Of a stretch of 64,000 nucleotides of DNA, positions 4,508 to 46,643 are shown one piece after another (position 1 is the stretch's first letter; the number at the start of each line of letters is the position of its first letter). This stretch comes from Selaginella moellendorffii. Lineage: Eukaryota > Plantae > Lycopodiophyta. A program made the position numbers and the translations under genes. The stretch spans positions 1,291,388 to 1,355,387 of the forward strand of contig NW_003314297.1 in assembly GCF_000143415.4 (NCBI RefSeq). Reading direction: 5' to 3'. The notes beneath the pieces are model-generated. The model worked only from the letters and a program-made list of their open reading frames with translations, had not been told where the DNA came from and did not search any database.

Positions 4508-4769
4508 CTTTGATTTACTACTAAATTGCTCTCTATGGACTTCGAAGTTCCTACCATGAGTATAATTCCTTCTTTAGTTTACTTCAAATTTGTGTCATTG
4601 AAACTTTTTCTTCTAGGTTTACTAGAAGACGTGGAAGAAAAGGAGGTGGATGGCCTTTCATCCAATTTTAGTGATTCGAACTGTGATTCAGGTGTGGATA
4701 ATGATAATGATGCTCTCCTAAAGGTTTGTTTAGTTTCCAGTCTCTTAGATTCATGATTTGCGATATTTC

Positions 4770-5795
4770 TAGGCCTTCTATAATTTTTTGCGATTGAGGG
4801 GATTTAGTAGTCCAGCTGCATTTAGCACCTAGATACACCTAAAGATCCTCAAGACTAAGACTATTGTTTACCTTGCATGCTATCTTAGAATTTCCAAGCC
4901 AACACTGTACAAATACATGTGGCTTGTTGATCCAAATTGGAGAAGTGTATATTACAGAGTACCACCTGAAAAGGTACTTTATCACATTCAGACTAACAAT
5001 GCCATGAATCGAGGTGGCACAAATTGAGGGATTATCAATTCTTTATCTAGTTGTCAAACTAGAGGATATTAGTTTAGCTGACACCAAATTTGTCAAGCCT
5101 TAACCACTCACAATCTAACTAGGCTGGAATAGAGGCACATGACAAGGATTTGACGATGGATTTATAAGAATGAGAAGGTTTATACACTTTGCTATATGGA
5201 TTGTGAGTATTCTTTCATTTTTGCTTTTTTGTCAGCATATGTGGTAACATGTTTATTGTAGTATATTGCAAGCTTGTAAGCTATGGTTTCTATGTATATG
5301 CCATTATTTGTAGGGCAACTCATTATATTGTAGCTTGTGAGCTAGCTACCTCCAAAGAATCCCATGCAATATTCAACATATGTGCGTAGGCTGTTTGTCA
5401 ATTTGGAAGGCTCAAGCGCATTCGGAGCAACAATGCTTTAGAGCACAATGAGGTTGAGAGGGACATGATTTGCTGTTTTCGTCCTGTAGCTAAGAGCTTC
5501 ATACGTGGGACATCAACACGTAACTAGGTACTCACAATGTTAGAGTTTTTTCAAATAAAAACTAAATCAAATTTGTTTTACAGCACATAGTGCATTTGTG
5601 GAGAGAGTTCTTTGAGTGCATGGTATGGTTTTATAAGCACCTTTTTAGTCCATGGAAGACATAGAAATTCTCAATGTATCTAATCCATGGCACAACTAGA
5701 GTCTACATTGTGTCTTTGCTCCGCACCTCAAGAAGGATATTTCACACTGGGTTGCAACCTAGAACTTCTATGATGTCCGTCCGTATCAATGTGGT
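4770..5795 (+). pseudogene. Integrase-like (rve/IS3-IS481-type) DDE transposase remnant with introns
   Basis: HTH YLACYLRISKPTLYKYM; then LCYMD|(intron 5203-5261)YCKLVSYGFYVYAIICRATHYIV...AVCQFGRLKRIRSNNALEH...FIRGTSTRN*|(intron 5528-5583)HIVHLWREF...FYKHLF...LHCVFAPHL. This is colinear with the recalled family consensus WHxDGxHKL..RSDxGxEN..HNQRIERLWRD..LHxVF. Confidence 0.8.
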
Positions 5796-8082
5796 AATTA
5801 TTTTAGACCATCTTATGTTCTTGCAAATTTATTTCAACTGATGGAACGAGAGCTTGGGTAAAAATTTTCGTAATGTTACAGAATTCTTTATAAATTATGC
5901 TTTTGTAAGATTATATCGGCTGTTGGTGAAAAAGATATTGAAGACATACCGGGACCTTTTCTCTCCAATGTTGAAGGTGCAACTCTGTCAAAGGTAATCT
6001 TTAGAGCAAGAATAGAACAATTTCTTTTAATCTATTTCATTGTGCTTGGCTACCTTATAAGCTCTTGGCACTGTTTAAAACCAAGCATTTTTTATGCATC
6101 GGGAGGGACTCAATTTGGATGAGTAATATTTACTTTATTTGGATCTAACAATGGAGTGTGCAATGGCTAATATTACGGGTGTAAATCTACCACTACATCG
6201 AGAGTGCTTTGCTTACAGCAACACCAGTGAAGCGACGAGCTTTGGAAAAATTATACTTGGCCATACTCGGAGAAAATTGAGTGTTCTTTAGTGTACATTT
6301 CAAATTTAAATTTAATTCTTGATTTCCTCAATTTTAGGGTTCCCACATTCGGGATTAGGGTTTACACCAAGTCCCAAATGTGCCTTGGATACAAGGCAAT
6401 TTCATTTTATGACATGATTTTGTCGATGGTTTGTTCATTTTTCCAATCGATTCGCATCATCTAATCAGAGGCAAGGCTTCTAGTGCACACTCCCCTAATT
6501 GCAAGACCACCACCCAAGCAAGAGCGCCACAGCTACGATGGTGGGTAGCTTCTCCTCGATTAGGTTTGCATAACCAATCCCTTGTGGTTTCCATGCTCGA
6601 AGGAAGAACATTGCACGCCTCAACAGTAGTAGACACTATGCAGGAAACACTTCAGAAGCATGCACCCAAGCACTTGATGTTCTGCAATCAGTACAGCCAA
6701 CAATCTCGTGAGACACACGCTAGCCACTTGATTTTCCAAACTCCGCAGCAGGGACATCAACTCCAACAACATCCCATCCACAGCTCCTGACTGCATTTGA
6801 GCAAGCAGAGTGCCACCTAACATTGCATACACTGCAACATATATGGAACCTCCAACATGTTTCGTTCTCTTCACCTTCCTTGGAAAGCAGCAGCCTAAGC
6901 ATCTGAAATGAGCAAGTCCGAATGCCTCATGCCCATGGTGTTATTCAATCTGGAATGCTACCACCAACACCAACTACAAGACGTGCTCACGGAAGCCCAT
7001 ATAGTGCCACTACTACCAGCCCCACAACTCCACTAGCCACTACAATTCTCGCAACTCCATCTACCAATACAAGTGCTAGTATCTGGCCATCTACCTCCCG
7101 AAGCAACAAGCAGTCTAGTTCGGTAAGTTTTTCATTTATACCCGTCTTTTTTCCATGTGTTTTTCTGAGTAGGGTGAGTTGGCAATGCCACCACACCAGC
7201 GAGCTCATAGTTCCCCATCAGCATTCCACAACTACTCCCAAAGATCAACATCATCATCTAGTGGAGCTTCGATATCTAGATATATTCAAAGTAAACCCTC
7301 AGGGGGGGTTGCCATGTGAGACACAGGTATACATGACCTTATGCACTCTTCAAATTTTTTTTCTTTAGATTTGTTTGACTCATTTTTGTTTCACTGTGCT
7401 AGACTCTCTCACCGCTTGTAGCTGCATTGCACACCTATACCGATAACAATCGACAGTCTTTATTTTGTCATCGTGGATGTCATGGCAGTCGATCCAAAGT
7501 CATTGGTGGAATGTCTTCTATGACACCCTTGGTCGCTCAGCTGTTCACCACAGTCTTTGTCACCAAGTGGATTGCAATCCCGAAGACTTGGCATGTACAC
7601 TTGTATAGGTAGAAAAAAGAGCCATCTATGAAGGTGACGAAACTTGATGAGCTAGCAGTGGACCTCCAAGAGTGTCTTATATGAGATGGCTTATACTCCA
7701 GTATTCGTTTCCAACCCGGCACGGCCCAACATGTGATTCTACTATTACTTCAAGCCTCAGGAATCCAACCTTAATCCATGAACAACCTAGGAGCATTTGT
7801 CTGGTGTGCAAGGCAATCCAATAGTGGTGAGGCCTATGCCGAGTCTGCAAAATTTGGCCTCAACTCTATCCGGCCTTGCTACTGGACTCCTCAAACATCA
7901 TAGGGAGCTATAGCAAACAAGGCCAATGGCAACTGGGCAATAGTAATATACCTATACAATGTTATGGAACATCTTATTGACAAACATTGGCTAAGTTATC
8001 AAAAGCAAGCCTGAGCACTCGAGGAGAAGGATGTTCATGAATGTAAGTCATTATTTTTTTTAAGTTCCCTCATAAATATATG

Positions 8083-10701
8083 TTATAGTCTTTGCAGTTG
8101 TGGCTGCTACAAATATCTTGACTGCAAATGATGATCCCTTGGTGATAGAGCCATTTCTCCCAAGGCTAACCACGTAGGAACCAAACCAAGATGAGATTAA
8201 TGAAGAAGAAGACTCTACGGATGAAGAGGACATTCTTCCATTATCAAAAGAAACTCTCCCCACATAAGACAATATGAACATCACTGAAGTAAAAGAACAA
8301 GGTGATGGTGGGGATGAACCACACTAAGGATCTCTAGAAACATCCTTGTCACCAGAGATAGTGGCTCTATGCCATGTGGCTAGTAAGAAGCATTAACATA
8401 AATGAATATTTCCTTCATTTTCTAATTTTTGAGTGCAGATAGGCCAATGGTAGTGTATGACAGTGACGGTAGAGGCCTTGAAGACCATGGTGTGCCTCCA
8501 CCCCCCTTTCTAGAGGGAAGTAGCTCCACTCCACTTACTCTTATGGAGTTGCTTGACAACTTTTCCACAGTAGAGTAAGATAATTGAAAATTGTGCTATT
8601 CGAAATTGAACTAATGTTTACATGTAAATTATTGGAGTGTCAACAACGATGGATTGATGCCACCAATGCATTTAATAAAGTTATTCAGTTAACCACTCAG
8701 AATAGTGCCAACTTCATCATGTTGCAGCATGAGGAGGTTTCTGCCTTACAGGATACCAGCATAGCCCTTGAGGTGAGGGCATAAAGGGATGTTAAAGTTC
8801 TTTCACAGGTGCAATGGTTGAAACACAAGCTTTTTGGTTGCTTTAGCATAGAGAGCACAAGTGACAAGGAGATGCTAGATGTTGTTACTAGACACTCTAA
8901 GTTCCATTGGGCTAGAGGTGAAATATTTTTTCGGCGCGTGCTTTTTAGCCAAGCCATGCCTCATTAGTAGAATTGAGAGAGTGTTCTCCTTAAGCTTGGC
9001 CTTTTAAAAGCATAGTATGAGGGTGTGTTTTGTGATAACACAATCTCCTTACTAAAGGAAGCATCAATATGCCTCCTTCAATTGTTGAGTTCACAATAGC
9101 ATGGTTTATTGAAAAGAGGTACGTGTATTTATTTTTTAGCATTTAGTACCATCTTATTGTTTTGTGCAGGGACCTACGTAGGAATTGGGTGGATGCACAA
9201 CAATTGAGAGAATTATTTGACACTGCTGAAACACTATATTGTAAGTTCTCCCATTTCTGCATCGAAAAGGCCATGCTTTGGCCATGCTTCGGCCATACAG
9301 ACTTGCTCATACACATTTGAGGCCATTTCACATTTTAGTAAGCAATGGATTGCCTATGAATTGGAGTTCCCTCACTTGTCCTTCCGGATTGCACCAAACA
9401 ATGAATTCAGTTGTTTCCACTTCGCCTTCAATACTAATCTCCACACACCAAATTACAAAGTGGTCTATGCATCTGAGATTGGAGGAGCTTTGGTGTGGGA
9501 AGAAGCCATAATAGATGTAGATGAGCCACATGCAAAAGCCATTAGGGAGGTTGTTCACCAGATTCCAGGATTGGTAAGTGTAATTTTTACTTAGCTCACT
9601 ATAGTAACTTTGTGTTACAGATGCATGGACTGTTTGTGCTTAGGGAAGGAGCCATGTATTGGCATCCCAGGATGCCAGTGCATTCTAAGATGTTGCAACA
9701 AGAAAAGTGGGATATGGTAAATCACAAGTTTTATATGCCTCTCATTTCTATATGCATAGGCTGTCTTTGTGGGCTAGTTGCATTCAAATGTAATACACAG
9801 GTGTCTTGCGGGTGTACAATTGCAACATTGGCAATTGCAGTTGGAGAGGTTCCAAATGAAAATGACTGACAACTTGCCTGAGGAAGATTATATGAGATGG
9901 ACCTCAAAGCATGCACGCCGCATATTTAGAATCCACTCAACCAATTGTGAGGTGCATCAAGCGTAAAGGAGGAGGGCAATCGGCACAAGTCTATAGATTC
10001 CATTCTAGAGAACTTTGCAATTACCAACTACAACACAATGCTTGAGTCTAGACTCACTAAACTTGGTGAAGGTTATGAGTAGGCTGTGGAGGCATGTATG
10101 GCTGCAGTGGTCTGGCGTTACCTATTCATCAAGCCAAACGTAATGGGAGACTTACTTTGAGATGGCTTCCAACACTCAATGTGTATGGAAACTTGTTAGA
10201 GGCTTTACAAGAGTCCAGTATTGCTAGGTGGGCTTTCACTCATTGGGACAGATGCTTTGTTACAGGTCTTCTGGGTAAGGACAATCATTCCTCCTACGGA
10301 GTTCATCAACTGTCTGATCTTTGATCAGGACTTTGGAGAGAACTTCCGCAGCTAGATTGTGGATATCATCCAAGGTAACTATTTACTTTCACAAACAACT
10401 AAAACTTTTGTATATTTGAACATTTTATAGATATAAGCTCGAAAGAGTTATCCAAGTTCCTTGATAAGGAGATCCTATTTGGTACATCATCTACTCAATT
10501 TCCCAGATTCTCCACATGCACACGAGAAGTTTTCTTCCCTTTAACATACCCGTTAATGGAGTAGACCAAACACAAGATCCATCAGGCACTCCAAAATCTA
10601 GAGAGCTTGTATGGATTGGGCTGATGTTGTGGAAGTACTATAATCGAGACACTTTCACAATAAAAATAGATAATTGTCTTGAAGTATGTTTCACACTTTG
10701 A
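8083..10701 (+). pseudogene. HECT-like E3 ubiquitin ligase remnant, copy 1 (transposon cargo)
   Basis: Exons give EEAIIDVDEPHAKAIREVVHQI, GLFVLREGAMYWHP, AVFVG*L, YEMDLKACTPHI, ELSKF, and C-terminal PKSR(fs)ACMDW(fs)LMLWKYYNRDTFTIKIDNCLE, in HECT motif order. Confidence 0.65.
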
Positions 10702-10919
10702 AAGAGACTCTTTCTAGTTCATTGGTGAAATTAAAGGTAAGAATATTCAAAATATTCTACAAATACCCATTATAGGCACTTGTGGCCCTTGGTACCCTTT
10801 TGGCTTATGCTTGTCTCACCAAAGGTAGCTTCCAAAGCAACTCCCAATTTAAGATCTGGGTCAAAACTATCAAGCTTGGGTGTTATATAATGCCTATCCT
10901 CACTTGAGGAACTCTCAAC

Positions 10920-11332
10920 TTATTTCATGGTAAAACCAAAATCATCCAGGTTTGTGAACTCGTCCTCTCTTGCATCTCGAGCAGTAATATATCCCTCGCT
11001 GTCGCTTTCTTTAACAGGACCTTTCCCCCCGGCGATTGGTACAACATTAGATGGAGTCTGAGGCTGCCTTGTCAGAGGGATTCTCAAGCCTTGAGAAGAG
11101 TAGGCATTATATAGAATCCTTGGTCCTATCCCCTGTTGGATCCATTGTTGTGCCTCAAAGAAGTCATAGAATCCTCTCCAATTTGCCATGCCAAGAGGAA
11201 ACCCAAAAACCTCAAACATTGCAAAAGGGTTAGAGTATATAGGAAACTATCACAAATTTACTTTTACCAAAGTGATCACAAGCTTCCAATCCCTGAAAAC
11301 TCCAGTTCTTCAGCCGTAAAACACAGCATATA
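10920..11332 (-). pseudogene. RNase H1 N-terminal hybrid-binding (Cauli_VI-type) domain gene, copy 1, cut by an LTR
   Basis: Two exons: YAVFYG*RTGVFRDWKLVITL|VFGFPLGMANWRGFYDFFEAQQWI. Matches YAVxxGRxxGxxxxWxxxxxxVxGFxxAxxKxFxxxxEAxxW. Confidence 0.75.
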
Positions 11333-12848
11333 TGTAAGCTCCTGAGTTTAGACTTCCTGGGATGTCACCTAGCCCAGTACTATTCAAGCCCAAAGACGCT
11401 TAACCCCAACTATCCCAAAACCCTTAACCGATTGGAAAAGGGGGTGCACTCTTGTTCATGGGCCCTTTCCCTCTATATTTGAACCCCTATGGATCGTCTC
11501 TCGAATCGTTCCCTTTGGTTGCTTACAATCCATCACGCTTCCCTGCAAGTTCAAGCCCTCGTGAACGGAAGCTGAAAGCCGCAGCTCTCCCGAGAGCCCC
11601 GCTCTCTTGACACCCTACCCCTCGGGTCGAGCCCAGCGGGAGCAAACTGGACTAGCCAGATGTCAATCAACATATGGTGTGATTCCCTTAAGCCAACCAA
11701 CAGATTTGGACCTGAGACCGCTCCAATACCAAGTGGTATCGGAGCCAGGGACCGAGACCGGGACCGAGACCGAGACCAAGGCCGAGGCCGAGACTGAGCC
11801 CAAGCCCGAGTCCAAGTCCTAGTCCGAGTCTGAGTCCGAGTCCGAGTCTGAGAGGGTGAAAGCCCAAAGCGTTTGTCTCCCAGACCCTAGGGGGTTTGGT
11901 GAGCTCCAAAAGTATAGTAGGGGGAGGACTGCAGTGGAGCTAGTTTAGCCAGGAAAGGCCAGTTTGGCCCAGGAAGGCTGTACCCAGTGTTGGGTGATGA
12001 GCTGCCCACTGGGAAGTCCAAGACTAGAGTGAACACGAACCGACAAGCAGGGTAGCTTGGTGAACTATTCAAGAGCTAGCTCTAGTTCCCCCGGGAAATC
12101 GACTGGCCGATGCTCCCAGTCCAAGTGTGGGTGGCACTACCTACTTGGATACCTAGCATGGCTCAATGAAACCTTGCTCTAAGCCCATGGCTAGAGCACC
12201 TAAAGGTAGAAGGTGGGGAGAGTACCCATGAGGCTCGCGTAAGGCCATGGTGTTTTGAAGTGTTGTCCCAAAGTCCCAGATGGTGAAAAGGAAGAAGAGC
12301 AATCGTCTAGTGTAGTGACCAAGGATATGGTCACAGGGTGAGGAAGTCCCGAAGGACAGTGGGACTTAGAGGTCGGGTCTGCGAGCCTTCATCCAGTGGC
12401 AGTGTTGGCGAACACGGCCATCGATAGAAAAGGGACTTGGTGGGGACCGGAAAAGAGATGCTGGGGAAGGCTATTCCCCATGTCTGTGAGCATCCTAAAG
12501 ATGCTAAGGAGTGGATCTGGGTTGATCACTCATGGATGGATGGCCTAGTCTTTGAGAGACAGGACTGTGATGCAGGTGGTGTTAGACCACCAGTGCGACC
12601 AATGTAAATGGGCATGGCCTTAGCATAACGGGCTGAGAGGTCGGTGGTACCTTGGGGTGTCGATCATGGGATCGGACATGTGGAGCACTTGGAGCAAGTG
12701 CAAAGGTTGAGTGGCATGGATGCCATTCTCGGGGCTAGCAAGCCCCAAGTCTTGAATGGGACTTATGGAGGTTGTGAATGAGACTCCTCCAAGTGGTCGA
12801 AGATGCGGTTAAGTGACTAAAGTAGAATGGAAAAATTAATCGCTTACA
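11333..12848 (+). mobile_element. Solo LTR (1516 bp) of a Ty3/gypsy family, TGTAAGC...GCTTACA
   Basis: 7-bp terminal inverted repeat with TG..CA ends. Shares the hexamer array, the agcccaaag and tccaaaagtatagtag blocks and the 3' end (gcttaca) with the LTR at ~37375-38409, which is followed by a PBS and gag. Confidence 0.8.
11749..11851. repeat. Degenerate hexamer array (CCGAGA/CCGAGT) inside LTR
   Basis: gaccga gaccgg gaccga ... gtccga gtctga repeats. Confidence 0.9.
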
Positions 12849-15500
12849 TTATAGTTGCTACAAATATCTTGACTACAAATGATGGTCCCTTGGTGATAGA
12901 GCCATTTCTCCCGAGGCTAGCCATGCATGAGCTAAACCAAGATGAGATTAATGAAGAAGAAGACTCTGTAGATGAAGAGGATATTCTTCCATTACCGGAA
13001 GAACTCTCCCCGCACAAGACAACATGAACATCACCAGAATCGAAGAACAAAGTGATGGTGGGGATGAACTGCACTAAGGATCTCCAGAGACATCGTTGTC
13101 ACCAAAGATAGTGGCTCCAGACCATGCGGCTGGTAATAAGTATTAACATAAATGAATATTTCCTTCATTTTCTAATTTCTGGGTGCAGATAGGCCAATGG
13201 TAGTGTATAACAGTGACGGTAGAGGCCTTGAAGACCATGGTGTGCCTCCACCCCCCTTTCTAGAGGGAAGTAGCTCCACTCCACTTACTCTTATGGAGTT
13301 GCTTGACAACTTTTCCACAGTAGAGTAAGATAATTGAAAATTGTGCTATTCGAAATTGAACTAATGTTTACATGTAAATTGTTGGAGTGTCAACAACGAT
13401 GGATTGATGCCACCAATGCATTTAATAAAGTTATTCAGTTAACCACTCATGATAGTGCCAACTTCATCATGCTACAACATGAGGAGGTTTCTGCCTTACA
13501 AGATGCCAGCACAACCCTTGAGGTGAGGGCACAAGAGGATGCTAAAGTTTTCTCACGGGTGCAATGGCTGAAACACAAGCTTTTTGGTTGCTTTAGCATA
13601 GAGAGCACAAGCGATGAGGAGATGTTAGACGCTGTTGCTAAACACCCTAAGTTCCATTAAACTAGCAGTGAAATATTTTTTCGGTGCGTGCTTTCCAGCC
13701 AAGCCATACTTCATTGGCAGGATTGGAAGAGTGTTCTGTTTAAACTTGGCCTTTCAGAAGTATAGTACAAGGGTGTGTTTTGTGACAACACAATCTAACA
13801 GCTCCTTATTGAAAGAAGCATCAATGTGCCTCCTTCAATTGTTGAGTCTATAATAGCATGGTTCATTGAAAAGAGGTACGTATATCTAGTTTTTAGCACT
13901 TAGTACCATCTTATTGTTTTGTGTAGGGACCTACGTAGGAATTGGGTGGATGCACAACAATTGAGAGAATTATTTGACACTGCTGAAACACTGTATTATA
14001 AATTCTCCCATTTTTGCATCGAGAAAGCCATGTTTCGGCCATACAAACTTGTTCGTACACGTTTGAGGCCATCTCACATTCTAGTAAGCAATGGATTGCC
14101 TATGAATTGGATTTCCCTCACTTATCCTTCCAGATTGCACCAAACAATGAATTCAGTTGTTTCCAATTCGCCTTCAATACTAATCTCCACACACTAAATT
14201 ACAAAGTGGTCTATATGTCTTAGATTGAAGGAGCTTTGGTGTGGGAGGAAGCCACAATAAAAGCAGGTGGGCCACATGCAAAAACCATTAGGGAGGCTGT
14301 TCACCAGATTCCAGGATCGGTAAGTGTAATTTTCATTTGGCTCACTAAAGTAACTTTGTGTTACAGATGCGTGGACTGTTTGTGCTTAGGGAAGGAGCTA
14401 TGTATTGGCATCCCAAGATGCCAGTGCATTCTAGGACATTGTGACAAAAAGAGTGGGATGTGGTAAGTTAATTTAAAGCACAAGTTTTATATGCTCCTCA
14501 TTTCTATATGCACAGGTTGTCTTTGTGGGCTAGTTGTTATTCCAAGTGTTCAAATGTAATGTACAAGTATCTTGCGGGTGTACAATTGCAACTGGAGAGG
14601 TTCTAGACAAGAATGACCGACGACTTGCCCGAGGAGGACTATATGAGATGGACCTCAAGGCATGCACACCGCATATTTGGAATGCACTCAACCAATTGCG
14701 AGGTGCATCAAGCCTAAAGGAAGAGGGCGATCGGCACAAGCTTGTGGATTCCATCCTAGAGAAATCTGCAATTACCAACTACAATGCAGTGCTTGAGTCT
14801 AGATTCACTAAACTTGGTGAAGGTTATGAGTAGGTTGTGGAGGCATGCGTGGCTATAATGGTCTGGCATTACCTATTCATCGAGCCAAATGTAGTGGGAG
14901 ATTTACTCTAAGATGGCTTCCAACACTCAATGTGCATGGAAGCTTGTTAAAGGCCTTACAAGAGTCCAGCATTGCTAAATGGGCTTTCACTCATTGGAAC
15001 AGATGTTTTGTTACAAATGTTTTGGGTGAGGACGATCATTTGTCCTGTAGAGTTCATCAACTACTTGATCTTTGATAAGGACTTTGGAGAGAACTTTCGC
15101 AGTTGGATTGTGGACATCATAGTGAGGTAACTATTTACTTTCACAAACAACTAAAACTCTTGTATGTTTGAACATTTTATAGATATAAGCCCAAAAGAGT
15201 TATCCAAGTTCCATCACTTTGTGGTTGATTCTCTACAGTTCTGATAGGGAGAGCCTATTTGGATCCAAGTTAAGAGACAGGGTACATCATCTGCTTGATT
15301 TCCTAGATTCTCCATATGCACACAAGAAGTTTCTTCCCTTTAACATACCTATTAATAGAGTGGACCAAACACAAGATCCACTAGGCACTCCAAAATCTAG
15401 AGAGCTTGTATGGATTGGGCTGATGTTGTGGAAGTACTATAATCGAGACACTTTCACAATAAAAATAGATAATTGTCTTGAAGTATGTTTCACACTTTGA
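12849..15500 (+). pseudogene. HECT-like E3 ligase remnant, copy 2
   Basis: EEATIKAGGPHAKTIREAVHQI, VVFVG*LLFQVF, LYEMDLKACTPHIWNALNQL, LL*DGFQ, FRSWIVDII, YKPKELSKFHHFVVDS; putative catalytic Cys codon TGT at 15407-15409 in a shifted frame. Confidence 0.68.
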
Positions 15501-15719
15501 AAGAGACTCTTTCTAGTTCATTGGTGAAATTAAAGGTAAGAATATTCAAAATATTCTACAAATACCCATTATAGGCACTTGTGGCCCTTGGTACCCTTTT
15601 GGCTTATGCTTGTCTCACCAAAGGTAGCTTCCAAAGCAACTCCCAATTTAAGATCTGGGTCAAAATTATCAAGCTTGGGTGCTATATGATGCCCATCCTC
15701 ACTTGAGGAACTCTCAGCC

Positions 15720-16153
15720 TATTTCATGGTAGAACCAAAATCATCCTCTGGGTCTATGAACTCATCTTCACTTGCATCTTGAGCAGTGATATATCCCTCA
15801 CTGTCGCTTTCTTCAACAAGACCTTTCCTTTCAGTGATTGGCACAACATTAGATGCAATCTTAGGCTGCCTTGTTGGAGGGATTGTCAAGCCTTGAGAGG
15901 AGTAGGCATCATATAAAATCCTCGATCCTGTCCCCTGTTGGATCCATTGTTGTGCCTCAAAGAAGTCATAGAATCCTCTCTAGTTTGCCATACCAAGAGG
16001 AAACCTAGAAACCTCAAACATTGCAAAAGGGTTAAAGCATATAGGAAACTATCACAAATTTACTTTTACTAAAGTGATCACAAGCTTCTAATCCCTGAAA
16101 ACTCCAATTCTTTAGCTGCAGCACACAACATACATTGGATAGTTTTGCCCCAT
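15720..16153 (-). pseudogene. RNase H1 HBD gene, copy 2 (retains ATG)
   Basis: MGQNYPMYVVCCS*RIGVFRD*KLVITL|V.RFPLGMAN*RGFYDFFEAQQWIQQG. Confidence 0.7.
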
Positions 16154-17134
16154 GCTTGGAAACCCTTTTTACAAATTTCAAAATTTGAAATGGTTATGAT
16201 TGGAAAATGTTAAAAGTGTCCATTGTTATCGCTTTTCATGTTACTGCATGCAATTGCAACTTCCATATTTTCAAATCTCCTTTAACATGCTCCTTTTGAG
16301 AGAACTCTAGGTCCAAACATTAACACTATACACCTTTGTGTAGTACATAATTGAAATATAAGCCCCACCAATTCATGGAATTGGTTAGACTTCAACTTAA
16401 TTTTGAGTCATATGCAAATCTTCTAAGCATCATGGTACAAAACTAAAGCATTGAGAGAGCTACACTAGAAATTAATGGCAACGAAGGATAAACTCAATGG
16501 GATGCATTAGAGATATGATTCCAAACAGTATATATCCATGGCTTTGCAATGGGGCTAGATGGAGTTCACTTATGCTTGCTATGAACACTATGTTAAAAGA
16601 GGTGTGCTAAAAAAGGATAATTCAATTTTTTTGCCAAGAGCAAAAAGCTCTAGATAAGGTAGTATAATATGCAATTTGGCCGATTGTCCATTTGGTTTGC
16701 AACATTAACAACTTGCTAGAATGCATGGGATGAATGGGTCTATTGAATGGGTCTATTGAATGGCTCCATTCTATACATAGCATGGGTCATTGCTATGGGC
16801 ATGATGCCCCATCTGGGGCATAAGGATTGGATATTTGTAAAATATTTTATGCTTGTGTTTTTTTCACACTCATAATACACATGGACCAATAGCAGGCATA
16901 CACATGGTGTGAGTGAAATCTGCCACAGTAACCCTTTTACGAATTGCACGCCATACATTTCTCTAGTGGAATGGAATCGCGAAATTTCTCACGGCTACTC
17001 GGACTCCACGTCACTGTCCAGATCACCGCAATGTCCTGCAATGGCACTGCCACGCGGCATCATGTGAGTGACGTGTTTGGAACACGTGTCAATCATGTAT
17101 CCTCCTCGCGCCGCGGGGGGCTTATGAATGCCAG

Positions 17135-17346: not shown

Positions 17347-17398
17347 TCTCCCGCCCTCGTTGAGCGGGCATCGGCCAGGCGCGGCGGGCGAGCAGGAG

Positions 17399-29461: not shown

Positions 29462-32400
29462 TCACGAGAAGTCGGCATCAGCAGGAAAAGCGACGCCTTG
29501 GATGGGATCAAGTTGGCGTAAATTAGAGCTGGCTCCTGTCGTCCGCCTCCTGTGAAGTTCACACAAACACAGACAGAGAAAGTAGCTTGTTTTGTGAGCA
29601 ACACAGTACCAGGGAGGTAACCAAAGGCACAGGTGCTTTTCTCCCTTTTGACTTACCGTTTCGAGTGCCGTGACAGATGAATAGATTGCTGGCCTGGCCG
29701 CGGACGAGTACTGCTTCAGCTTTGCAGAAAGAAGTGTCACCAGGTCCTTCATCATGGCCATCTGCAAATTATTGTACTGCTCCACGTCCTACATCGCGGC
29801 ACACAACACAAGCACCCGAGTTAAAACTTAAAAAGAGGCGAGGTCCATGGCCGTGGAAGAAGAGACTGGGCGTGGGCTGAGCTTTCTTCCTAGACTCGAC
29901 TACACAGGGAGGACAGAGTTTGATGTGTGTCACCTTCAGCCTTTGCTGCCGCTGCTCCAGCGTGAACTTCAACTCCTCCTGTCGCTGGAGCTCGTTACGG
30001 AGTCCGAGGCTGATTAGCGATCCCTGCTGCTCCTTGGAGACTGGACGTTAAAGGTTAAGACGCGAGGAGTTTAAGAGGAAAGAAAGCTGGCGCTTGCCTT
30101 CTTCCAAGGACGATTCCACGGCCTCGAGCTCTGCGCACTTGTCCTGGTACAGCTTGTTTTCCCGTGCAAACTCTCTCTGGACTGACTCCACTTCGTTTTG
30201 CAGCCTGCTTAGCTTCCTAAGAGACATCACCAGCACGCGACGAAACAAAAACTTAGAGGTCTTTACTCCACCGAGGAGGAAGAAGAAAAGGAAGAGACTT
30301 GGGATCCGACCTTTCATAGAGAGACGAGACTTCCAAGTGGTGGCGCTTCTTTTCCGCGTGGACGATCTCCAGGTCCTGCTTGGTCTTCCTCAGGCTCTGC
30401 AGGAGTTTGACCCTGGGGGCGACTTTCTCCTTGTTCTCCCGGAGCGACTCGTTGACCTCCGCCAGCAGCGAAGTCAACGTGCCGATGGCCTTGTCCAGCT
30501 CCTCGTCCCCGCCGCTCGACTCGAGCACGTCTTCCAGCATTCCTGTAACATTCCAGTTCGTGTAACATAGCTTTGGCTCTTGCCTTGTGAGTTTAGTTTG
30601 ATTTACCAGGAACGACGGGGTGTGGCATGGAGGAGGCCTGGTGCTGGAGAATTTGCAGCGTTCTTCGCAAGGCTCCAAACTCGGTGGCCATGTCGTCAGT
30701 CTCCTTTTTCATCGTCCTGTACGTGATGCTCTTCGCTCGCAGTGATTCCACAAACTGTTTGAGTTCTTCTCCTCGTAGAACTGTGCCTTTGACCTGAAAC
30801 AGATGAAACTAAGTTGGTAAAAAGAAAATCGAAATTGTAAACAAATAGAGAAAGATATTTGCCTCGTTGATAAAGTTGGTCTTTTGGGAGAAGTCGACTA
30901 TGAGTTGCTCTTTTCTTGCTGTGAGAGCCGTGACCTTGTCAAACGCTACTTTGAGCCTCTCGGCGACCAAAGCACTCTGCTGCCACTGCACAGAGTCGCC
31001 GTCGGGGGAGAGCTCGTTTCTCTTCTCCAGGCAGCTTCGTTTCCTCAGAGACTTGAGCTCGTTGTTTGCTGATACAAGCTTTGCCTGTGTCGAAAGAACC
31101 TCCATTGCAACAAAAAAGGATGAAAAAAACGAAGAGTACCTGAATTCGCGAGATTTTGTCATCGCTGTAGTTAGGATCATTCAAAACTTTGTCAAGAGCG
31201 TCTTTGTGTCGCTGTTTGTCTGCCAGCTCCTGAATAAGAGTTTGGAAGAGACAAGGTAAATCAACAGGAAAATGGAAGATATAAATCCCCCCACCTTTGG
31301 AAGTTTTGTGTCGGCGAGATAGCGTAGCATTGATATTTCCTGAGCAATTCTTTCGCTCATGAGCGGAGGTGGTGTGTTCACTAGGGCCTGCATGTACTCG
31401 AGCTTCAGCAGTGCTTTCCCGTGCTTCCCTGAGCGGCATATCGTTCCAATCAATCGACCAATTTGGAAGGAACTAGGAGGATGATTTAAATTTCTACCTG
31501 ACTCGGCAGCTAAAGCTCGCTTTTGTTCCTTTACATTGTTCGCCAAGTTCGTCTCATCCAGCTTTTCGACCCTGTGTTGCTCAACCAATGCAAGGATTTG
31601 ATCGAGCTTTGCTACATGCTGGCCAAAACCAAACAAAGCACAATCTAGCAGCAGGAGAAAGAGGGAAAAGAAACCAGATGCGAACGACTTACTTGGAGCT
31701 TGGCTCGCAGTTTGGAGACTTTTGTAGACAGGTGTTCTTTCTCGGCTTCTAGTTTGTGGACGTTTTCTCGCAAAGAGACCACGTCTTTCTCCGTCTGCGC
31801 CTCCTGGAGGCTTTGCAGCCGGCAATAGTTGGCTTTGAAATGGTCCCTCAGAGCTCCGCACTGCGCTTGCAAGATGTTGCAGTCCTCGTCCAAGAGAAGC
31901 TCTCCAGGAATCTCCACTTCGTTTAGAAATTGTGACAAGTATACGTGCTTCTTAAACACCACAATCTAGAAAACAATAACCAAGCAGCCACCAGCAAAAA
32001 GAAGTCAGAGTATGAGAAAGGAAGAAACAAAACTCACTTTGCATTACTGTTTAGATGGAAAATGACCTGAGGAAGCAGCCATGAGAGCAAAGGATAAATC
32101 ACGTCTCTGCTCCCGGAAGATAAACCTTGACGAAATGATATCCTGCATTAGTGGAGCGATTGAATCCAAGCGAAAAGAGTAGAAAACAATATTTTCTTCT
32201 TACGCATCCATGTTGGGGAAATAATAGGAGCGCAAGAGCTCCATCATGCAAGCAGTGGACGCCTCTAGCCCATTGCTCTCCAAGCATTTCTTCTGGAAGA
32301 AGAATGAATCGATAGGCATTTAGATGGATGCGTTACCTGGCTGGGACTGATGTAGCTCAAAACGCGGACAAGTAGCTGCCGCAGCTGCTGGGGACTCTTT

Positions 32401-37119: not shown

Positions 37120-37374
37120 ATACTGCATGATTATAATAAAAACGTGATGCTATTTCAAGTCAGTCTTTGTTACTCACACAAAAACATGTTTACGCTATGC
37201 AAAAGCTTCGGTTGTAGTTCTATTTACGGTTGCTACTTATTTATCTTATTTGTAAAAATAAAACATTTAAAGTGCTGGAACTTTCCAACTCTTTATATAT
37301 TTATGGAATCAGTTTATCTTTTATATGTTAAGAACTACCAAATGCATGAGTTAGTTGATTCTGATTCAAAGTTC

Positions 37375-41073: not shown

Positions 41074-42467
41074 ATACCCTATGATTATAACAAAAACGTC
41101 TTAATTTGAATACTCACCCTTCCACAAAGATGTGTTTCAACCCTGAACTCATGGTTGCAGCTCTTCTGATGGCTGGTAAATAGTAGTAGTCCAAACTTTC
41201 ATCTCAGTTCTTGAATATCAAAATGCTTGTTTAAATATTATAAGAACTAATTAAAGCCTAACTAAAATGATTATCATCTAATATTTAACATGTAGTGTGT
41301 AATTCTAGTTTACTTCTTTAAACATGTACTTTGCTTATTAGTGAGGAGGCACATAGTGCAGGGCAAGGTGATAGGGGGTTGGAAAGTTAGAAAGCCAGGC
41401 AAGATCATCTAGGTGTTAAAGACACTTTTTATGGTGAACCTATAAAGGAGCATGTTGATCTCCATGGTGCGAAAGTTGTTTTGATGTCATGAATTAAATG
41501 TGTCCAAGGATATTAGGAAGACCAAAATTACACTTGTAGATTAGCAAAACAATGTCCAAAGCAATCCACTAAAGGTAATTGTTGAAACTTGAAAACAAAT
41601 GCAAAAGTACAAGTACAGCCATGAGCTGAGAGTAGATTTATTCTCTAGCAACTTCAAGGCCTTTTAGAACTCTAGACTCAATTGAAAATCTTAGAATAAA
41701 TAAGTTAACTATCACTATATTCTATATTACTTTGCAGTAATCACTTTGTTTCTATATTGTAGTAGAGTATTTTATATGATAGAGCATTCCTAAATATGCT
41801 AGTTTTTTAAGCTCATAATTCATTTCAAATACCAACCATCCATCCTTATGAGCATAAAATTCTGAAGGACTCCAAGATACTTCAAGATATAAGGCAAATG
41901 ATCAGCCTAAAAGATCAACTATGAATAGATGCAATTCTTTAGTTCTCCTTTAAACTTCAATTGAAAAATTATGTATAATATACTTGATATTTGGATAGAG
42001 CTCAGTGCTTTGTTGGGATCATCACCCATTATGTCTATTGATAACATGTTGATTCTCACCATCACTTTGACCTTTTGAAAAGAAATATACAATATTAGTG
42101 AACAAAACTGAATAAAAAACAAACAATGGATACAAAGGTATTAAAAGTAATAGCACCTCAAGTATGAACCATACTATGGATTTGGAAGTAGCTTGTTTGC
42201 TATTATCCAATGGTGAAAATAATAACAATTTTCACTAGATTTCTAACAATGATAATCTTGAGGAAGAGCCAAATAACACTCTTTTGCTACACTTGCTTTG
42301 CATGATGTATAGCTATATACCTCTGGCACAACTTATTGATTGCAACAACATCTCATCATTGTTCCTGGAGTTGTAAAAGCTAATCATAGTAGTGTTGTAG
42401 TTGGTATTAATTTGTTAAAATATAAAGTGGAAAATTTAAAATTAGTGACATTGATATAACCTTTAAG

Positions 42468-42573
42468 AGAGGTCAACTATGAGTTGCTCTTTTCTTGCCA
42501 TGAGACCTTGAGCTTGTCAAATGTTGCTTTGAGCTTTTTAGTGACCAAAGCACTTTATTACCATTACACAAAA
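42468..42573 (-). pseudogene. Decayed IFT81 exon fragment, left flank of element B
   Basis: Aligns to 30887-30995 with C>T/G>A changes; continues at 45406. Confidence 0.8.
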
Positions 42574-43214
42574 TATGGCATGTTATTTATAAAATGGTGT
42601 TGCATGAAAAATACCATACTGTGCAATATTGCATTTGCCAAGTGGCAACATTTGATTGGTCTATCATAACCATATTTCTATTATAAACATCCAATGGGCA
42701 TCCAATGTGATCAGATTTCCATACATGTCTATTATGCACATCCCAGTACATGTCTACTCATCCTTTGATTAGTGTCTGGTGAGGCCTACTTGTTGTTGTG
42801 TAGGGCACTATGGTGGAGTCTAGATCCATGGGTATTGGTACTAAAAAATCTAGGGCAATAACAAGGTAATTTATATTTAAAATAGTTAGATGGTTTTATT
42901 TTCTTTTGATGACAGGATTTGTAAGGAGGTTTTGACATATAGCATACATAATGAAGCTTAAGAAACATGAGTAAATTTCTATTGTCAATTTCAAACTTCT
43001 TTATTATAGATAACGACATTTTTTTGCTTGAGATTTTCGTTAGGTCTCATAGAAGAGCAAGATGGTATAAGTGGACAGTCTATCCCATATGATTTAGACT
43101 CTTCTTGAACATTTGAGAGTGATAACAAAGAGCAATACACAGAGGTATATAATTTCATGTTTAGAGTAAATTATTAAATATATGATTATAAGAATTCTAA
43201 CATTCCTTGGTTTC

Positions 43215-43805
43215 TAGATGTTTTAGCAATCCAATTGCTTTTTATTTGTGGATGCATTTGTGAGACCAAGACAATGGATTACTTAGCATCATATTTACAG
43301 ATTTCAAATCTAACATTGTATAAATATATGAGGTTCATTGATGTAAATTGAAGAGTAAGATACCATCATTAGAGGTGTTTCATCATATCCTCACTAACAT
43401 TGCCATGAGTCACAGTGATACAGATTGTAAATGGCCACTCAAGTTGTCAATATTATTTTAGTCAATGTCAAATTTGCAAAGCTTTAGCTATACAAGACCT
43501 TATAAGGCTCACTTTAAACTTATTTCTGTCATGCTTTACTCTAGCAGCATAATGTAAACTAGTATCATATGGATTTTATGTCCATGCTATGATTTGTGGT
43601 GCTACACATAACATCATCTTTTACGAGTTATCAACTACAAAGCAGTAATATGTAATTTTTAACATTTATGCACATGTTGTTTATAAATTTTGCTATCCAA
43701 AATAGATTAGAAGCAATCACACACTAAAGGCCAACGATGTGGAGAGTAGAATATAGACCTCCCAAGCTTCACCTTTTATCAGTGGCACTTCAACACAAAA
43801 CCAAA
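43215..43805 (+). pseudogene. Integrase-like DDE transposase remnant, copy B
   Basis: KTMDYLASYLQISNLTLYKYMRFID, FHHILTNIAM, CKLVSYGFYVHAMICGATHNII, YPK*IRSN, FISGTSTQNQ; homologous to 4770-5530. Confidence 0.82.
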
Positions 43806-44384
43806 TACAAAATATCTACTCAAATCTTTTTAAATTTTAAATTTCTTATATATATATATACACACACACACATTTTATTTTTTTCACAGCATAATCAGAG
43901 CATTAAGAAATAAAGATATTGAACTCTTGCTTAGATCATTTCTATGCAGTGTTGAAGGTGTTACTTTGCCACAAGTATTTAGTTTTATCTTTTTTGTGAT
44001 GTTCCCTATGTTAAGAATTTCTTTGTTTTGAACAACACATAACAACAATCCAGAATCAAGCATTTTCACTCTATTATACTAGGCGAAATCTAGATGAATA
44101 ATACCTTTTACTCTTGAATTTATTAATATTATGTGCACTAGCAAATATAAAAAGACATCCCACTCATAGACTACATTGCAACAACACTATGTATGGCAAC
44201 TCTAGTCATTAGAAGAGCTCTTGAAAAGTTGCAAATGACCATTCTCCATCTAGCTTAGTTATGAATTCTTTAAAATTTATTTGTTCTTTAAGGTGTATTT
44301 TAATTTTAAGTAGTGGAATTCAAATGTTATCACCAACTATGTATTAATATTATTGATTCACAAATAAAATATAATAAAGCATAA

Positions 44385-44700
44385 TTATATTCCTAGATTG
44401 GGAGATTGGCAAGCATGAAGTATAGATTTGAGCAATGTGTTTAGAATCATATAGCAAATCATAGAAGGTAACAATCTTATCTGAAAAATATACATCCTAT
44501 AAACTAGTATGAGAGTTAAGTGGCCTTCACCACTTTTAACATACCTGAAAAGTATAGTGTTCCATGAAACATAGTCCCAAATACACGTATGAATGTTGTC
44601 CAAGCCCATGTATGTGTCCACAAAGCTTCTACATTTGGAATACATGTCAACTACACAGTTTGCGATATAAACATCTTATATAAACCTCCTTCAAGTGGCC
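44385..44700 (-). pseudogene. Decayed PPR fragment inside element B
   Basis: MYSKCRSFVDTY..LDNI....DYVSWNTILFRYVKSGEGHL. Confidence 0.65.
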
Positions 44701-45405
44701 TTGTAAATAATATGATTTACAAGAGGTATAACTATCTTCGAAACATAAACCTCTTTCAGGCAGCTTTATAAATAATATGATTTACAAGAGGTATAACTAT
44801 CTTCCAATCTCGATAAATTTCTGTCCTTCTTCTATACATAGCATATAGTGGGAAATTTTGGCCCATTCTTCCAAATAAAAATAATAATTAAGTATCTAAG
44901 CATTTTGAAATCTCAAATAGTTATATTAACTTCCCCATGAAACAATGGAATTCCATAAAATTTCTTGCACTGCTCTAGAATGAGCGTCCAATGTTATTGA
45001 TAGTTGAAATATATGAAGTTAATCACTTTATTTGAGCTCCTCAGCCCTTGCTAAATTGTAATAGTGCTCAAAAGCTTTAATCAATTGAAATTAGAAAAGG
45101 CACTAGGAATCAGGGAAAAAATTCAAGGCTTATAGTTAGAAATATTTTGAAACAATAAATGGGTCTAATTAAATGGTTATGGATGGATAAGGGGCCATTT
45201 ACATGGCCATGATCCCCACATAATGGCCATTAGATTCTAGGGAATATCCTTCAAAAATCTAATTCAATTTCATGCGTAATCAATTTCACATAAGGAATAT
45301 ACCGTTTCATATCCAATTTTATACGTAGATTATTCTACTAAATGCCCCATGGCTTGTTTTTAGTACAGTCTTTTTTCATGCCAACACCAGTTTACGAATA
45401 ACATA

Positions 45406-46643
45406 GTCTCCGTTGGGGGAGAGCTCGTTTCCGTTTTCTCAGAGATTTGAGCTCGTTGTTTGCTGATACAAGCTTTGCCTGTGTTGAAAGCACCTCCATT
45501 GCAACAAAGAAAAGGAACTCGCAAGATTTTGTCATCGTTGTAGTTGGGATCATTCAAAACTTTGTCGAGGGCGTCTGGTGTCGCTGTTTTTCTGCCAACT
45601 CCTGAAAAGAGCTTGCAAGAGACAGGGTAAATCAACAGGAATAGCGTAGCACTGATATTTCCTGAGCAATTCTTTCGCTCATGAGGGGAGGTGGTGTTCA
45701 CTAGGACCTGCATGTACTCGAGCTTGAGCAGTGCTTTCCCGTGCTTCCCTGCGCGGCATATTGTTCCAATCAATAGACCATTTTGAAAGGAACTTAGATC
45801 TCTACCTGACTCGGTAGCTAAAGCTCGCTTTGGTTCCTATACATCGTTTGCCAAGTTCATGGAGAAAGAGGACAAAGAAACCAGATGTGAACGACTTACT
45901 TGGAGCTTGGCTCGCAATTTGGAGACCTTTGTTGACATGTGTTCTTTCTCGGCTTCTAGTTTGTGGACGTTTTCTCGCAAAGAGACCACGTCTTTGTCCG
46001 TCTGCGCTTCCTGGAGGCTTTGCAGCCGGCAATAGTTGGCCTTGAAATGGTCCCTCAGAGCTCCGCATTGCACTTGCAAGATGTTGCAGCCCTCGTCCAA
46101 GAGAAGCTCTCCAGGAATCTCCACTTCACTTAGAAAGTGTGACAAGTATACGTGCTTCTTAAACACCACAATCTAGAAAACAATAGCCAAGCAGCCATCA
46201 GTAAAGTATGAGAAAGGAAGAAAACAAAACTCACTTTGCACTACTGTTTAGATGAAAAATGACCTGAGGAAGCAGCCATGAGAGCAAAGGATAAATCACG
46301 TCTCTGCTCCCGGAAGATAGACCTTGACGAAATGATATCCTGCATTAGGGGAGCTATTGAATCCAAGCGAAAAGAGTAGAAAAAAATATTTCCTTCTTAT
46401 GCATCCATGTTGGGGAAATAATATGAGCGCAAGAGCTCCATCATGCAAGCAGTGGACGCCTCTAGCCCATTGCTCTCCAACCATTTCTACTGGAAGAAGA
46501 ATGAATCAATAGGCATTTAGATGGATGAGTTACCTGGCTGGGACTGATGTAGCTCAAAACGCGGACAAGTAGCTGCCGCAGCTGCTGGGCTCTTTTGGCT
46601 GCTCAAGAAAAGAAACAAAAAAAGAATAATCTAGCAGTGATTC
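45406..46643 (-). pseudogene. IFT81 5'-half duplicate, exon 1 deleted, internal deletions
   Basis: Matches 30995-32448; lacks the MADVQ exon. Confidence 0.88.

What the first reader, a model, noticed from the sequence alone, without database searches (positions are those of the whole stretch)
42574..45405. Second, diverged family member reveals both TIRs and independently confirms the transposase
Seen: ~45-bp imperfect TIRs interrupt a duplicated IFT81 exon that resumes immediately after the right end. Its left terminus TATGGCATGTTATTTATAAAATGG matches the reverse complement of element A's right end, TATGGCGTGCAATTCGTAAAAGGG. Its peptides (YLASYLQISNLTLYKYM; CKLVSYGFYVHAMICGATH; FISGTSTQNQ) parallel element A while differing heavily at synonymous sites. 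The outermost right bases and the TSD appear lost by a small deletion. Inference: an old, diversified family with at least two subfamilies once under purifying selection.
Basis: seen in the sequence. Interest (0 to 1): 0.8.

Follow-up and report, generated by a model that had tools for sequence, protein, structure and literature searches.

The report
Decayed IS3EU/GingerRoot-like transposon copy
A dead, internally deleted 2.8-kb cut-and-paste transposon of the integrase-like IS3EU/GingerRoot kind sits inside a duplicated IFT81-like exon of a clubmoss-type genome; it is an ordinary genomic fossil, of note mainly because its better-preserved relatives make 5-bp rather than the usual 6-bp target duplications.

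Summary
Window 42574-45405 is a real transposon insertion (element B). It has significant terminal inverted repeats. Its two flanks are contiguous in an uninterrupted paralogue at 30991-30995. Five collinear coding blocks match element A (4600-6280).

The A/B divergence carries a strong codon signature (differences 0.37/0.21/0.55 by codon position; same for transversions only; introns unalignable). The two lineages therefore separated under purifying selection.

One A exon retrieved a Selaginella moellendorffii gene model carrying Pfam rva_4 (integrase core). Ten related loci from that genome gave intact copies: 8.5 kb, 63-bp TIRs, termini TATGG..CCATA, and two genes. These termini are the published IS3EU hallmark (TAYGG..CCRTA). 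GingerRoot, the same superfamily, was described from Selaginella.

All ten A-type copies are about equally distant from B, so B is a separate lineage.

B is non-autonomous. It has in-frame stops, lacks the exon with the catalytic E, lacks the second gene, and has lost the tip of its right TIR plus most of its target duplication in a ~9-bp deletion.

One departure from the literature: five independent insertions of the A-type relatives have 5-bp, not 6-bp, duplications.

The window is plant, not human.

The parts
42574..45405 (+). Element B: decayed, internally deleted, non-autonomous IS3EU/GingerRoot-like DNA transposon (2832 bp, GC about 32-35%)
   Evidence: TIRs. Empty-site paralogue. Coding homology to A and to S. 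moellendorffii rva_4 gene models.
42574..42611 (+). Left TIR of B, starting TATGG (the TAYGG terminus)
   Evidence: 22/26 identity to the terminus of intact relative L001, anchored at nt 1, 0/1000 shuffles.
45372..45405 (-). Right TIR of B; the outermost ~6 nt (GCCATA) are missing
43256..43366 (+). Transposase remnant, N-terminal helix-turn-helix exon (contains YLASYLQISNLTLYKYM)
   Evidence: tblastx block 1 with A 4845-4955. Weak Pfam HTH_22, E 0.0012.
43553..43804 (+). Transposase remnant, integrase-core exon (CKLVSYGF... to FISGTSTQNQ). It has three in-frame stops, and the second catalytic D reads N.
   Evidence: tblastx block 2 with A 5267-5458. P0011 59% identity over 64 aa; P0012 HSP E 4.8e-31. 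The family carries Pfam rva_4.
43882..44246 (+). Transposase remnant, C-terminal exons (three blocks). The ~300 bp that in A (5584-5900) encode the NQRIE..LW exon with the catalytic E are absent between 43805 and 43881.
44388..44675 (-). 96-aa stop-free stretch with a PLS-type pentatricopeptide (PPR) pattern: possibly a captured host gene fragment
   Evidence: Smith-Waterman against the window's PPR gene scores 65, shuffle maximum 59, 0/1000. Several weak tblastn hits to PPR repeats, and none in 10 A-type copies. Pfam is negative.
44781..45320 (+). 3' non-coding region of B, homologous to the 3' region of A (16065-16678)
   Evidence: Local alignment z=7.5, 0/300 shuffles.
42569..42573 (.). Left copy of the presumed target duplication (CAAAA, from CAGAG by two G>A changes). 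On the right only AG (45405-45406 region) remains.
   Evidence: Junction alignment. 5-bp TSD rule from the relatives.
30991..30995 (.). Empty target site (CAGAG) in the uninterrupted paralogous IFT81-like exon
4508..16955 (+). Element A: a 5'-truncated A-type copy. It lacks ~377 bp including the left TIR. Transposase remnant at 4610-6280. Internal 4.75-kb tandem duplication 8105-11333 / 12856-16135. Right TIR ends ...GCCATA at 16955.
   Evidence: Collinear with the intact element L001:9784-18324 at 85-89%..

Best explanation
B is the fossil of a cut-and-paste DNA transposon whose transposase is an integrase-like DDE enzyme (Pfam rva_4/rve). Its closest described kind is the IS3EU/GingerRoot superfamily.

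Inferred mechanism for active relatives:
- An N-terminal helix-turn-helix binds the TIRs, which end in TATGG..CCATA.
- The RNase-H-type core (triad read from related copies as HMD ... 56 aa ... IRSD ... 34 aa ... NQRIE) cuts out the element.
- It joins the 3' ends to a target cut with a 5-nt stagger. Repair of that stagger gives a 5-bp duplication.

History of B. B inserted at CAGAG in an exon of a partial IFT81-like gene duplicate, after that duplication. It belongs to a lineage that had long evolved apart from the A-type lineage while both transposases were under purifying selection.

B is now inert. It has in-frame stops, N in place of the second catalytic D, loss of the exon with the catalytic E, and no second element gene. 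It may carry a captured PPR fragment. A ~9-bp deletion removed the right TIR tip plus most of the right target duplication.

Shown: the TIRs, the empty site, homology, the selection signature, family membership of the relatives, and the 5-bp TSDs of the relatives.
Inferred: the catalytic roles of the residues, the DNA-binding role of the HTH, the order of events, and the size of B's own TSD.
For: - TIR significance; precise empty site.
- A/B collinear coding blocks.
- Codon-position signature, robust to composition and to ascertainment; introns unalignable.
- A exon 5390-5524 retrieves P0001 (S. moellendorffii) at E 2e-9 out of 1.84 billion proteins.
- rva_4 hits above the gathering score on P0001, P0005 (E 2.7e-18), P0011 and P0012, plus rve at E 2e-7.
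- P0012 aligns to B at E 4.8e-31.
- Intact relative L001:9784-18324 has 63-bp TIRs.
- Termini TATGG..CCATA in 10 loci, and 5-bp TSDs in 5 independent insertions: TTTTT, GAGAG, GCTCA, ACTAA/ACTAT, CGCCG.
- Literature: IS3EU ends TAYGG..CCRTA with TIRs >30 bp (PMC12730594). IS3EU/GingerRoot has TA..TA termini and GingerRoot occurs in Selaginella (PMC10045372 and PMC6839031). GingerRoot captures gene fragments. An IS3EU-like element mobilises degenerate copies in trans (PMC10853768).
Against: - The published hallmark TSD of IS3EU/GingerRoot is 6 bp (rarely 7-8). The relatives here give 5 bp.
- B's own TSD cannot be read.
- No phylogeny against reference IS3EU/GingerRoot transposases could be made, so the link between Pfam rva_4 and that superfamily rests on termini, host and domain type.
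- No intact transposase was found. All 13 gene models are fragmentary.
- Pfam hits on A's own exon pieces are sub-threshold (E 0.017 for rve, 0.11 for rva_4) and B's core piece gives none.
- Only one B-type copy is known.
- The PDB profile search gives only E~0.7-1 to retroviral integrase cores.
Confidence: 0.85

Rival explanations
1. B is simply an old copy of the same lineage as A that decayed neutrally. On this view there was no separate lineage and no selection, and the resemblance at peptide level is what remains of one pseudogene.
For: Both copies share non-canonical states: N at the second catalytic D, and a TAA at the same codon of block 4. B is very AT-rich, so heavy C>T decay certainly occurred.
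Against: - The codon-position pattern 0.37/0.21/0.55 also holds for transversions and at A/T sites. It is outside 200 neutral simulations with block selection.
- Introns are not alignable while exons are.
- Ten A-type copies keep D and CAA at the 'shared' positions, so those changes are parallel G>A / C>T hits.
- B is equidistant from all A-type copies.
Confidence: 0.05
2. The elements belong to another integrase-type group that makes 5-bp duplications (Ginger2/TDD-like, or a derivative of an LTR-retrotransposon integrase) rather than to IS3EU/GingerRoot.
For: 5-bp TSDs in the relatives. TDD-4/5 and most LTR elements make 5-bp TSDs (PMC2836005 and PMC6839031). There is a weak rve hit.
Against: - Ginger1/2 and Gypsy ends follow TGTNR, and Ginger2 carries an H2C2 zinc finger. 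Here the ends are TATGG..CCATA.
- The region upstream of the core reads as an HTH, with no zinc-finger hit.
- There are no LTRs and no RT or RNase H genes in the 8.5-kb intact copy.
- The best Pfam model is rva_4, not rve.
Confidence: 0.08
3. B is not a transposon insertion but a piece of DNA carried in by the segmental duplications that riddle this window. On this view the 'TIRs' are chance.
For: The window is a patchwork of duplications. The left homology with the paralogue is only 105 bp. No intact TSD is present.
Against: - The TIR score is far above shuffles.
- The flanks abut within 0-2 bp in the paralogue.
- The left end starts at nt 1 of the family terminus shared by 10 unlinked loci.
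- The internal order (5' region, transposase, 3' region) mirrors the intact copy.
Confidence: 0.02

Closest known systems
IS3EU superfamily (Repbase; e.g. the TET+ IS3EU families of rust fungi, PMC12730594; overview in PMC10045372)
   Same: Termini TAYGG..CCRTA (here TATGG..CCATA). TIRs longer than 30 bp. DDE transposase of the IS3/integrase type without an HHCC finger. Multi-kb elements that carry at least one further gene.
   Different: The published TSD is 'usually 6 bp'. The relatives here give 5 bp in 5 of 5 independent insertions. The second gene here has no Pfam domain, whereas the fungal elements carry an alpha-kinase or TET/JBP gene.
GingerRoot of Selaginella lepidophylla (Cerbin et al. 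2019, PMC6839031); same lineage as IS3EU by phylogeny (PMC10045372)
   Same: Host genus Selaginella. TA..TA termini. Integrase-related DDE. Size range 3.9-12.9 kb (here 2.8, 8.5 and 12.4 kb). Many truncated copies or copies with a single TIR. Capture of host gene fragments (possible PPR piece in B). No currently active copies.
   Different: GingerRoot TIRs are 100-150 bp (here 33-63 bp). Its TSD is 6 bp (72/77), 7 or 8 bp, and never 5. The sequence relationship to the published GingerRoot DDE could not be tested because the supplement is not held.
Styx, an active IS3EU-like element of Zymoseptoria tritici (PMC10853768)
   Same: An element of about 8 kb with several genes and an integrase-type transposase. 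Cut-and-paste mobilisation. Degenerate copies are moved in trans, which is the likely way defective A-type copies (shared TAG stop in A and L001) spread.
   Different: Fungal host, 6-bp TSD, and demonstrated current activity. Here every copy seen is broken.
Ginger2/TDD and Ginger1 (Bao, Kapitonov & Jurka 2010, PMC2836005)
   Same: Eukaryotic cut-and-paste transposons with an integrase-like DDE and TIRs of 40-270 bp. TDD-4/5 make 5-bp TSDs.
   Different: Their termini are TGTNR and they carry H2C2 zinc fingers (plus YPYY and GPY/F motifs in Ginger1). Their TSD is 4 bp in most families. None of these features is seen here.

Membership tests
IS3EU/GingerRoot superfamily | Integrase/IS3-type DDE transposase core | tested here: met
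   Related S. moellendorffii copies carry Pfam rva_4 at E 2.7e-18 to 1e-7, above the gathering score, and rve at E 2e-7. A's exon retrieves them at E 2e-9. B aligns to P0012 at E 4.8e-31. The triad D-56-D-34-E was read from P0012/P0001; the catalytic role is inferred. B itself has N for the second D and lacks the E exon.
IS3EU/GingerRoot superfamily | TA..TA termini (TAYGG..CCRTA in IS3EU) | tested here: met
   B's left end is TATGG. A's right end is CCATA. 18 termini in 10 related loci are all TATGG/TATGA..CCATA. B's right tip is deleted.
IS3EU/GingerRoot superfamily | Terminal inverted repeats longer than 30 bp | tested here: met
   B: 33 nt at 88%. Intact relative: 63 nt at ~87%. These are shorter than the 100-150 bp of S. 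lepidophylla GingerRoot.
IS3EU/GingerRoot superfamily | 6-bp target site duplication (usual; 7-8 bp rare) | tested here: not met
   Five independent A-type insertions have 5-bp direct repeats, and no 6-bp reading fits. B's own TSD is unreadable: left CAAAA, right only AG. The literature words 6 bp as 'usually', so I treat this as a variant trait. It does lower the membership claim.
IS3EU/GingerRoot superfamily | No HHCC zinc finger; N-terminal helix-turn-helix instead | tested here: inconclusive
   There are weak HTH_22/HTH_17 hits on the exon upstream of the core in A and B (E 0.0012-0.1). No zinc-finger family appears on any gene model. All models are fragmentary.
IS3EU/GingerRoot superfamily | Placement inside the IS3EU/GingerRoot clade in a DDE-core phylogeny | not testable with these tools
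Ginger2/TDD | TGTNR termini and H2C2 zinc finger | tested here: not met
   The termini are TATGG. No zinc-finger hit was found. Criteria taken from PMC2836005.

The most novel reading that the evidence does not exclude
The Selaginella A-type and B-type elements may represent a distinct branch of integrase-type (rva_4) DNA transposons. They would use IS3EU-like TAYGG ends but cut the target with a 5-nt stagger, as LTR-retrotransposon integrases do, instead of the 6 nt reported for every described IS3EU/GingerRoot family. Like GingerRoot, they may pick up host gene pieces (a PPR fragment in B).
Probability: 0.4. Interest if true: 0.35.

Novelty: new variant of a known kind. Interest (0 to 1): 0.25.

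Why it matters
For annotation, this stretch and element A should be masked as IS3EU/GingerRoot-like DNA transposons. The S. moellendorffii 'hypothetical protein' models SELMODRAFT_413916, 407701, 432255, 404837 and the rest of the set are transposase fragments, not genes.

For transposon biology it adds three things:
- a second, deeply diverged lineage of this rarely described plant superfamily in a lycophyte;
- evidence that the lineages were once maintained by selection;
- a 5-bp target duplication, which bears on how stagger length varies among integrase-like enzymes.

None of this changes a major question.

Tried and rejected
- Pfam on single exon pieces of A and B gave only sub-threshold rve, rva_4 and HTH hits.
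- The word-index protein search with the A exon ORF 5207-5386 found nothing. The length filter makes it blind to full-length relatives.
- Local alignment of B-left against A-right(rc) alone was not significant (53/1000 shuffles). The 24-mer match has a chance expectation of ~0.2 per window.
- NG86 dS was undefined because of saturation, so I used codon-position and transversion counts plus simulation instead.
- Pfam failed to confirm IFT81. The PPR-like ORF also got no Pfam hit.
- A PDB profile search gave only non-significant integrase hits.
- The GingerRoot supplement with DDE sequences is not held. A paper search for PF24764/rva_4 was uninformative.
- The idea that hypermutation spreads from B into its flanks was dropped. 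Right-flank identity is 89-96%, and the left homology is only 105 bp.
- P0002, the second hit of the big search, is an unrelated repetitive piggyBac-like protein (DDE_Tnp_1_7) and was discarded.
- No B-type copy was found in the ten fetched loci. A genome-wide search of a plant assembly is not possible with the available collections.
Full report
WHAT THE WINDOW IS. The window is eukaryotic and plant-like, not human. It carries PPR repeats (23900-25400, minus strand), an IFT81-like gene, spliceosomal introns, and many segmental duplications. All detectable relatives of the element studied here come from Selaginella moellendorffii. The window therefore most likely comes from that species or a close relative.

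CHECK OF THE OBSERVATION.
- Ends. Element B (42574-45405) starts with TATGGCATGTTATTTATAAAATGG and ends with ...CGAATAACATA.
- TIRs. The two ends form an inverted repeat: arms 42580-42602 and 45382-45404 at 87%. The best local alignment is 33 nt at 88% identity, scoring 44 against a maximum of 29 in 1000 shuffles.
- Empty site. The flanks of B (42467-42570 and 45401-45858) match one contiguous stretch, 30888-31550, of a paralogous copy. At the junction the paralogue reads CACAGAG|TCGCC. The left flank of B reads CACAAAA|TATGGC and the right side reads GAATAACAT|AGTCTCC. This is a clean empty site with no excision footprint, so B inserted after the duplication.
- Host gene. It lies on the minus strand. 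The neighbouring exon ORF (31648-31962) matches IFT81 in the PDB (6IAN_C residues 125-202, E 0.0038). The interrupted coiled-coil exon gives no hit of its own. 'IFT81' is therefore plausible but only modestly supported.

RELATION TO ELEMENT A.
- Coding blocks. tblastx finds five collinear blocks between B and 4845-6268, same strand: 193 codons, 56% amino-acid and 62% nucleotide identity.
- Terminus. The 24-nt terminus match to A's right end (16932-16955) is 18/24. It is the best non-self match in the window, but about 0.2 such matches are expected by chance. A free local alignment is not significant, so this claim is weak on its own.
- What rescues the terminus claim. (a) The 3' non-coding regions align in the same orientation: A 16065-16678 with B 44781-45320, z=7.5. 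(b) The intact relative described below matches B's first 26 nt at 22/26, starting at nucleotide 1 of both elements, with 0/1000 shuffles reaching that score.

PURIFYING SELECTION.
- Differences by codon position are 0.37/0.21/0.55. dN is 0.32 and dS is saturated; where it is computable, bootstrap dN/dS is 0.07-0.23.
- Because B is very AT-rich, I checked that C>T decay is not the cause. With transversions only the pattern is 0.14/0.10/0.31 (position 2 against 3, p=8e-7). It also holds at sites where A has A or T.
- Because the blocks were chosen by peptide similarity, I simulated neutral divergence and picked the best five blocks by BLOSUM62. The simulated p2/p3 ratio was 0.77 (minimum 0.57), against 0.38 observed; 0 of 200 simulations reached it.
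- Three of the four stretches between blocks are not alignable above shuffles. This is the behaviour of introns.
- Much of the A/B divergence therefore accumulated while the gene was functional.

WHAT THE PROTEIN IS.
- Exon pieces, searched by reference one at a time, gave only weak Pfam hits: rve at E 0.017, rva_4 at E 0.11, HTH_22 at E 0.0012. The word-index search was blank.
- The single full-library HMMER job, run with A's exon 5390-5524, returned P0001 (S. moellendorffii SELMODRAFT_413916) at E 2e-9 and 70% identity.
- P0001 and its paralogues carry Pfam rva_4 'integrase core domain' above the gathering score. P0005 has E 2.7e-18. P0012 has E 2.4e-11, plus rve at E 2e-7.
- From these models the triad reads HMD, then 56 residues, then IRSD, then 34 residues, then NQRIE. 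The catalytic assignment is inferred from motif position.
- A has N for the second D and a TAG where other copies have CAG.
- B has N for the second D and three stops in the core exon. It lacks about 300 bp that in A (5584-5900) encode the NQRIE..LW exon.
- The changes that A and B appear to share (D>N, CAA>TAA) are absent from other A-type copies. They are therefore parallel transitions, not inheritance from an already dead ancestor.

THE INTACT ELEMENT AND THE FAMILY CENSUS.
- The locus encoding P0001 (L001, GL377587.1) contains an 8.5-kb element, 9784-18324, that is collinear with A at 85-89%. This shows three things about A:
 - A's right end at 16955 is a true terminus.
 - A lacks the first ~377 bp including the left TIR. 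It is cut off at 4508, exactly at the end of a 3.1-kb direct repeat.
 - A holds an internal 4.75-kb tandem duplication.
- The intact copy has 63-nt TIRs and two genes: the transposase and a 733-aa gene with no Pfam domain.
- Nine further loci were fetched through other gene models. Every terminus found reads TATGG (once TATGA) ... CCATA.
- The five independent insertions with both ends present have 5-bp direct repeats: TTTTT, GAGAG, GCTCA, ACTAA/ACTAT and CGCCG. The last is seen in two duplicated loci, each with one transition. No 6-bp reading fits.
- A is 84-88.5% identical to all ten copies over exons and introns. B aligns to all of them only in exons, at 67-72%. B is thus a separate lineage; by the 80% convention it is a separate family.

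COMPARISON WITH WHAT IS KNOWN.
[quoted passage not shown] GingerRoot, described from Selaginella lepidophylla, belongs to the same lineage (PMC10045372; PMC6839031).
- Rust-fungus IS3EU families 'have TIRs longer than 30 bp and end with TAYGG..CCRTA' (PMC12730594). That is exactly the terminus seen here.
- GingerRoot elements are 3.9-12.9 kb, often carry host gene fragments, and are restricted in plants to lycophytes and bryophytes.
- Styx, an IS3EU-like element, moves by cut-and-paste and mobilises degenerate copies in trans (PMC10853768).
- Ginger1/2 differ: their ends are TGTNR and they carry zinc fingers (PMC2836005).
- The element therefore works like an IS3EU/GingerRoot transposon and is most probably one. 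The departure is the 5-bp TSD, together with shorter TIRs than S. lepidophylla GingerRoot.
- I could not place the protein in a phylogeny with reference sequences, so membership rests on domain type, termini, architecture and host.

B's OWN TARGET DUPLICATION. With a 5-bp rule the target was CAGAG (30991-30995). The left copy is CAAAA, reached by two G>A changes. On the right the TIR tip (GCCATA) and the bases CAG are gone, leaving ...AACAT|AG. One 9-bp deletion explains this. A 6-bp target (ACAGAG) with a 10-bp deletion fits equally well. It cannot be proved from one copy.

OTHER CONTENT OF B.
- Between the transposase remnant and the 3' region lies a stop-free 96-codon stretch on the minus strand (44388-44675). 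It follows the PLS-type PPR pattern.
 - For: Smith-Waterman against the window's PPR gene scores 65, with a shuffle maximum of 59 (0/1000), and there are several weak tblastn hits to PPR repeats.
 - Against: Pfam is negative.
 - It has no counterpart in the A-type copies. It is probably a captured host fragment, but this is not proven.
- A 63-bp tandem duplication follows it.
- B has no trace of the second gene of the A-type elements.

LEFT OUT. Only exon-sized references were used.

VERDICT. The object is an ordinary decayed member (or close variant) of a known, though little studied, superfamily. The one mildly unexpected result is the 5-bp duplication of its relatives.

Noticed in passing
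window 1415-4507 and 17399-20493; junction at 4507/4508: A 3.1-kb direct repeat (96% identical) carrying kinase-like exons on the minus strand brackets element A plus 444 bp. A's 5' truncation coincides exactly with the end of the first repeat copy, which suggests a rearrangement at the element rather than simple decay.
   Followed up: partly
window 8105-11333 and 12856-16135: A 4.75-kb tandem duplication (87% identical) inside element A. The same region is single-copy in the intact relative L001:9784-18324. The spacer 11334-12855 holds 12-nt periodic GAGxCC repeats and a repeat that also occurs at L001:1-951.
   Followed up: partly
L001:12206-16209, L003:13548-16250, L004:13491-17512; window about 6400-11300: A-type elements carry a second large gene (733-787 aa gene models) with no Pfam domain. 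Published IS3EU elements also encode a second protein. Its function here is unknown.
   Followed up: no
window 44388-44675 (minus strand): A 96-codon stop-free stretch in B shows the PLS-type PPR pattern. It is absent from ten A-type copies and may be a captured host gene fragment. It is significant against shuffles but has no Pfam hit.
   Followed up: partly
L001, L002, L003, L008, L009/L010 element ends: Five independent insertions of the A-type family have 5-bp target duplications. The literature reports 6 bp for IS3EU/GingerRoot.
   Followed up: yes
L009:9637-19557 and L010:8667-16722: The same insertion, with the same flanking genes and the same target CGCCG, is present in two scaffolds of GCA_000143415.2. 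These are probably the two haplotypes or a recent segmental duplication. The two copies differ in length by about 1.9 kb.
   Followed up: no
window 5387-5389 and L001:11041-11043: A and the L001 copy share a TAG where other copies have CAG (Gln). A defective master was therefore still being copied, presumably mobilised in trans.
   Followed up: partly
window 33807-34338 versus 48211-48826; 35184-37145 versus 39170-41099: Further inverted and tandem segmental duplications (81-97% identical) surround the IFT81-like copies. The region is a duplication hotspot.
   Followed up: no
S. moellendorffii gene models P0001, P0003-P0014: Thirteen annotated 'hypothetical proteins' are chimeric, fragmentary models built on decayed copies of this transposon. 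P0012 even fuses antisense exons of the second gene to the transposase.
   Followed up: partly
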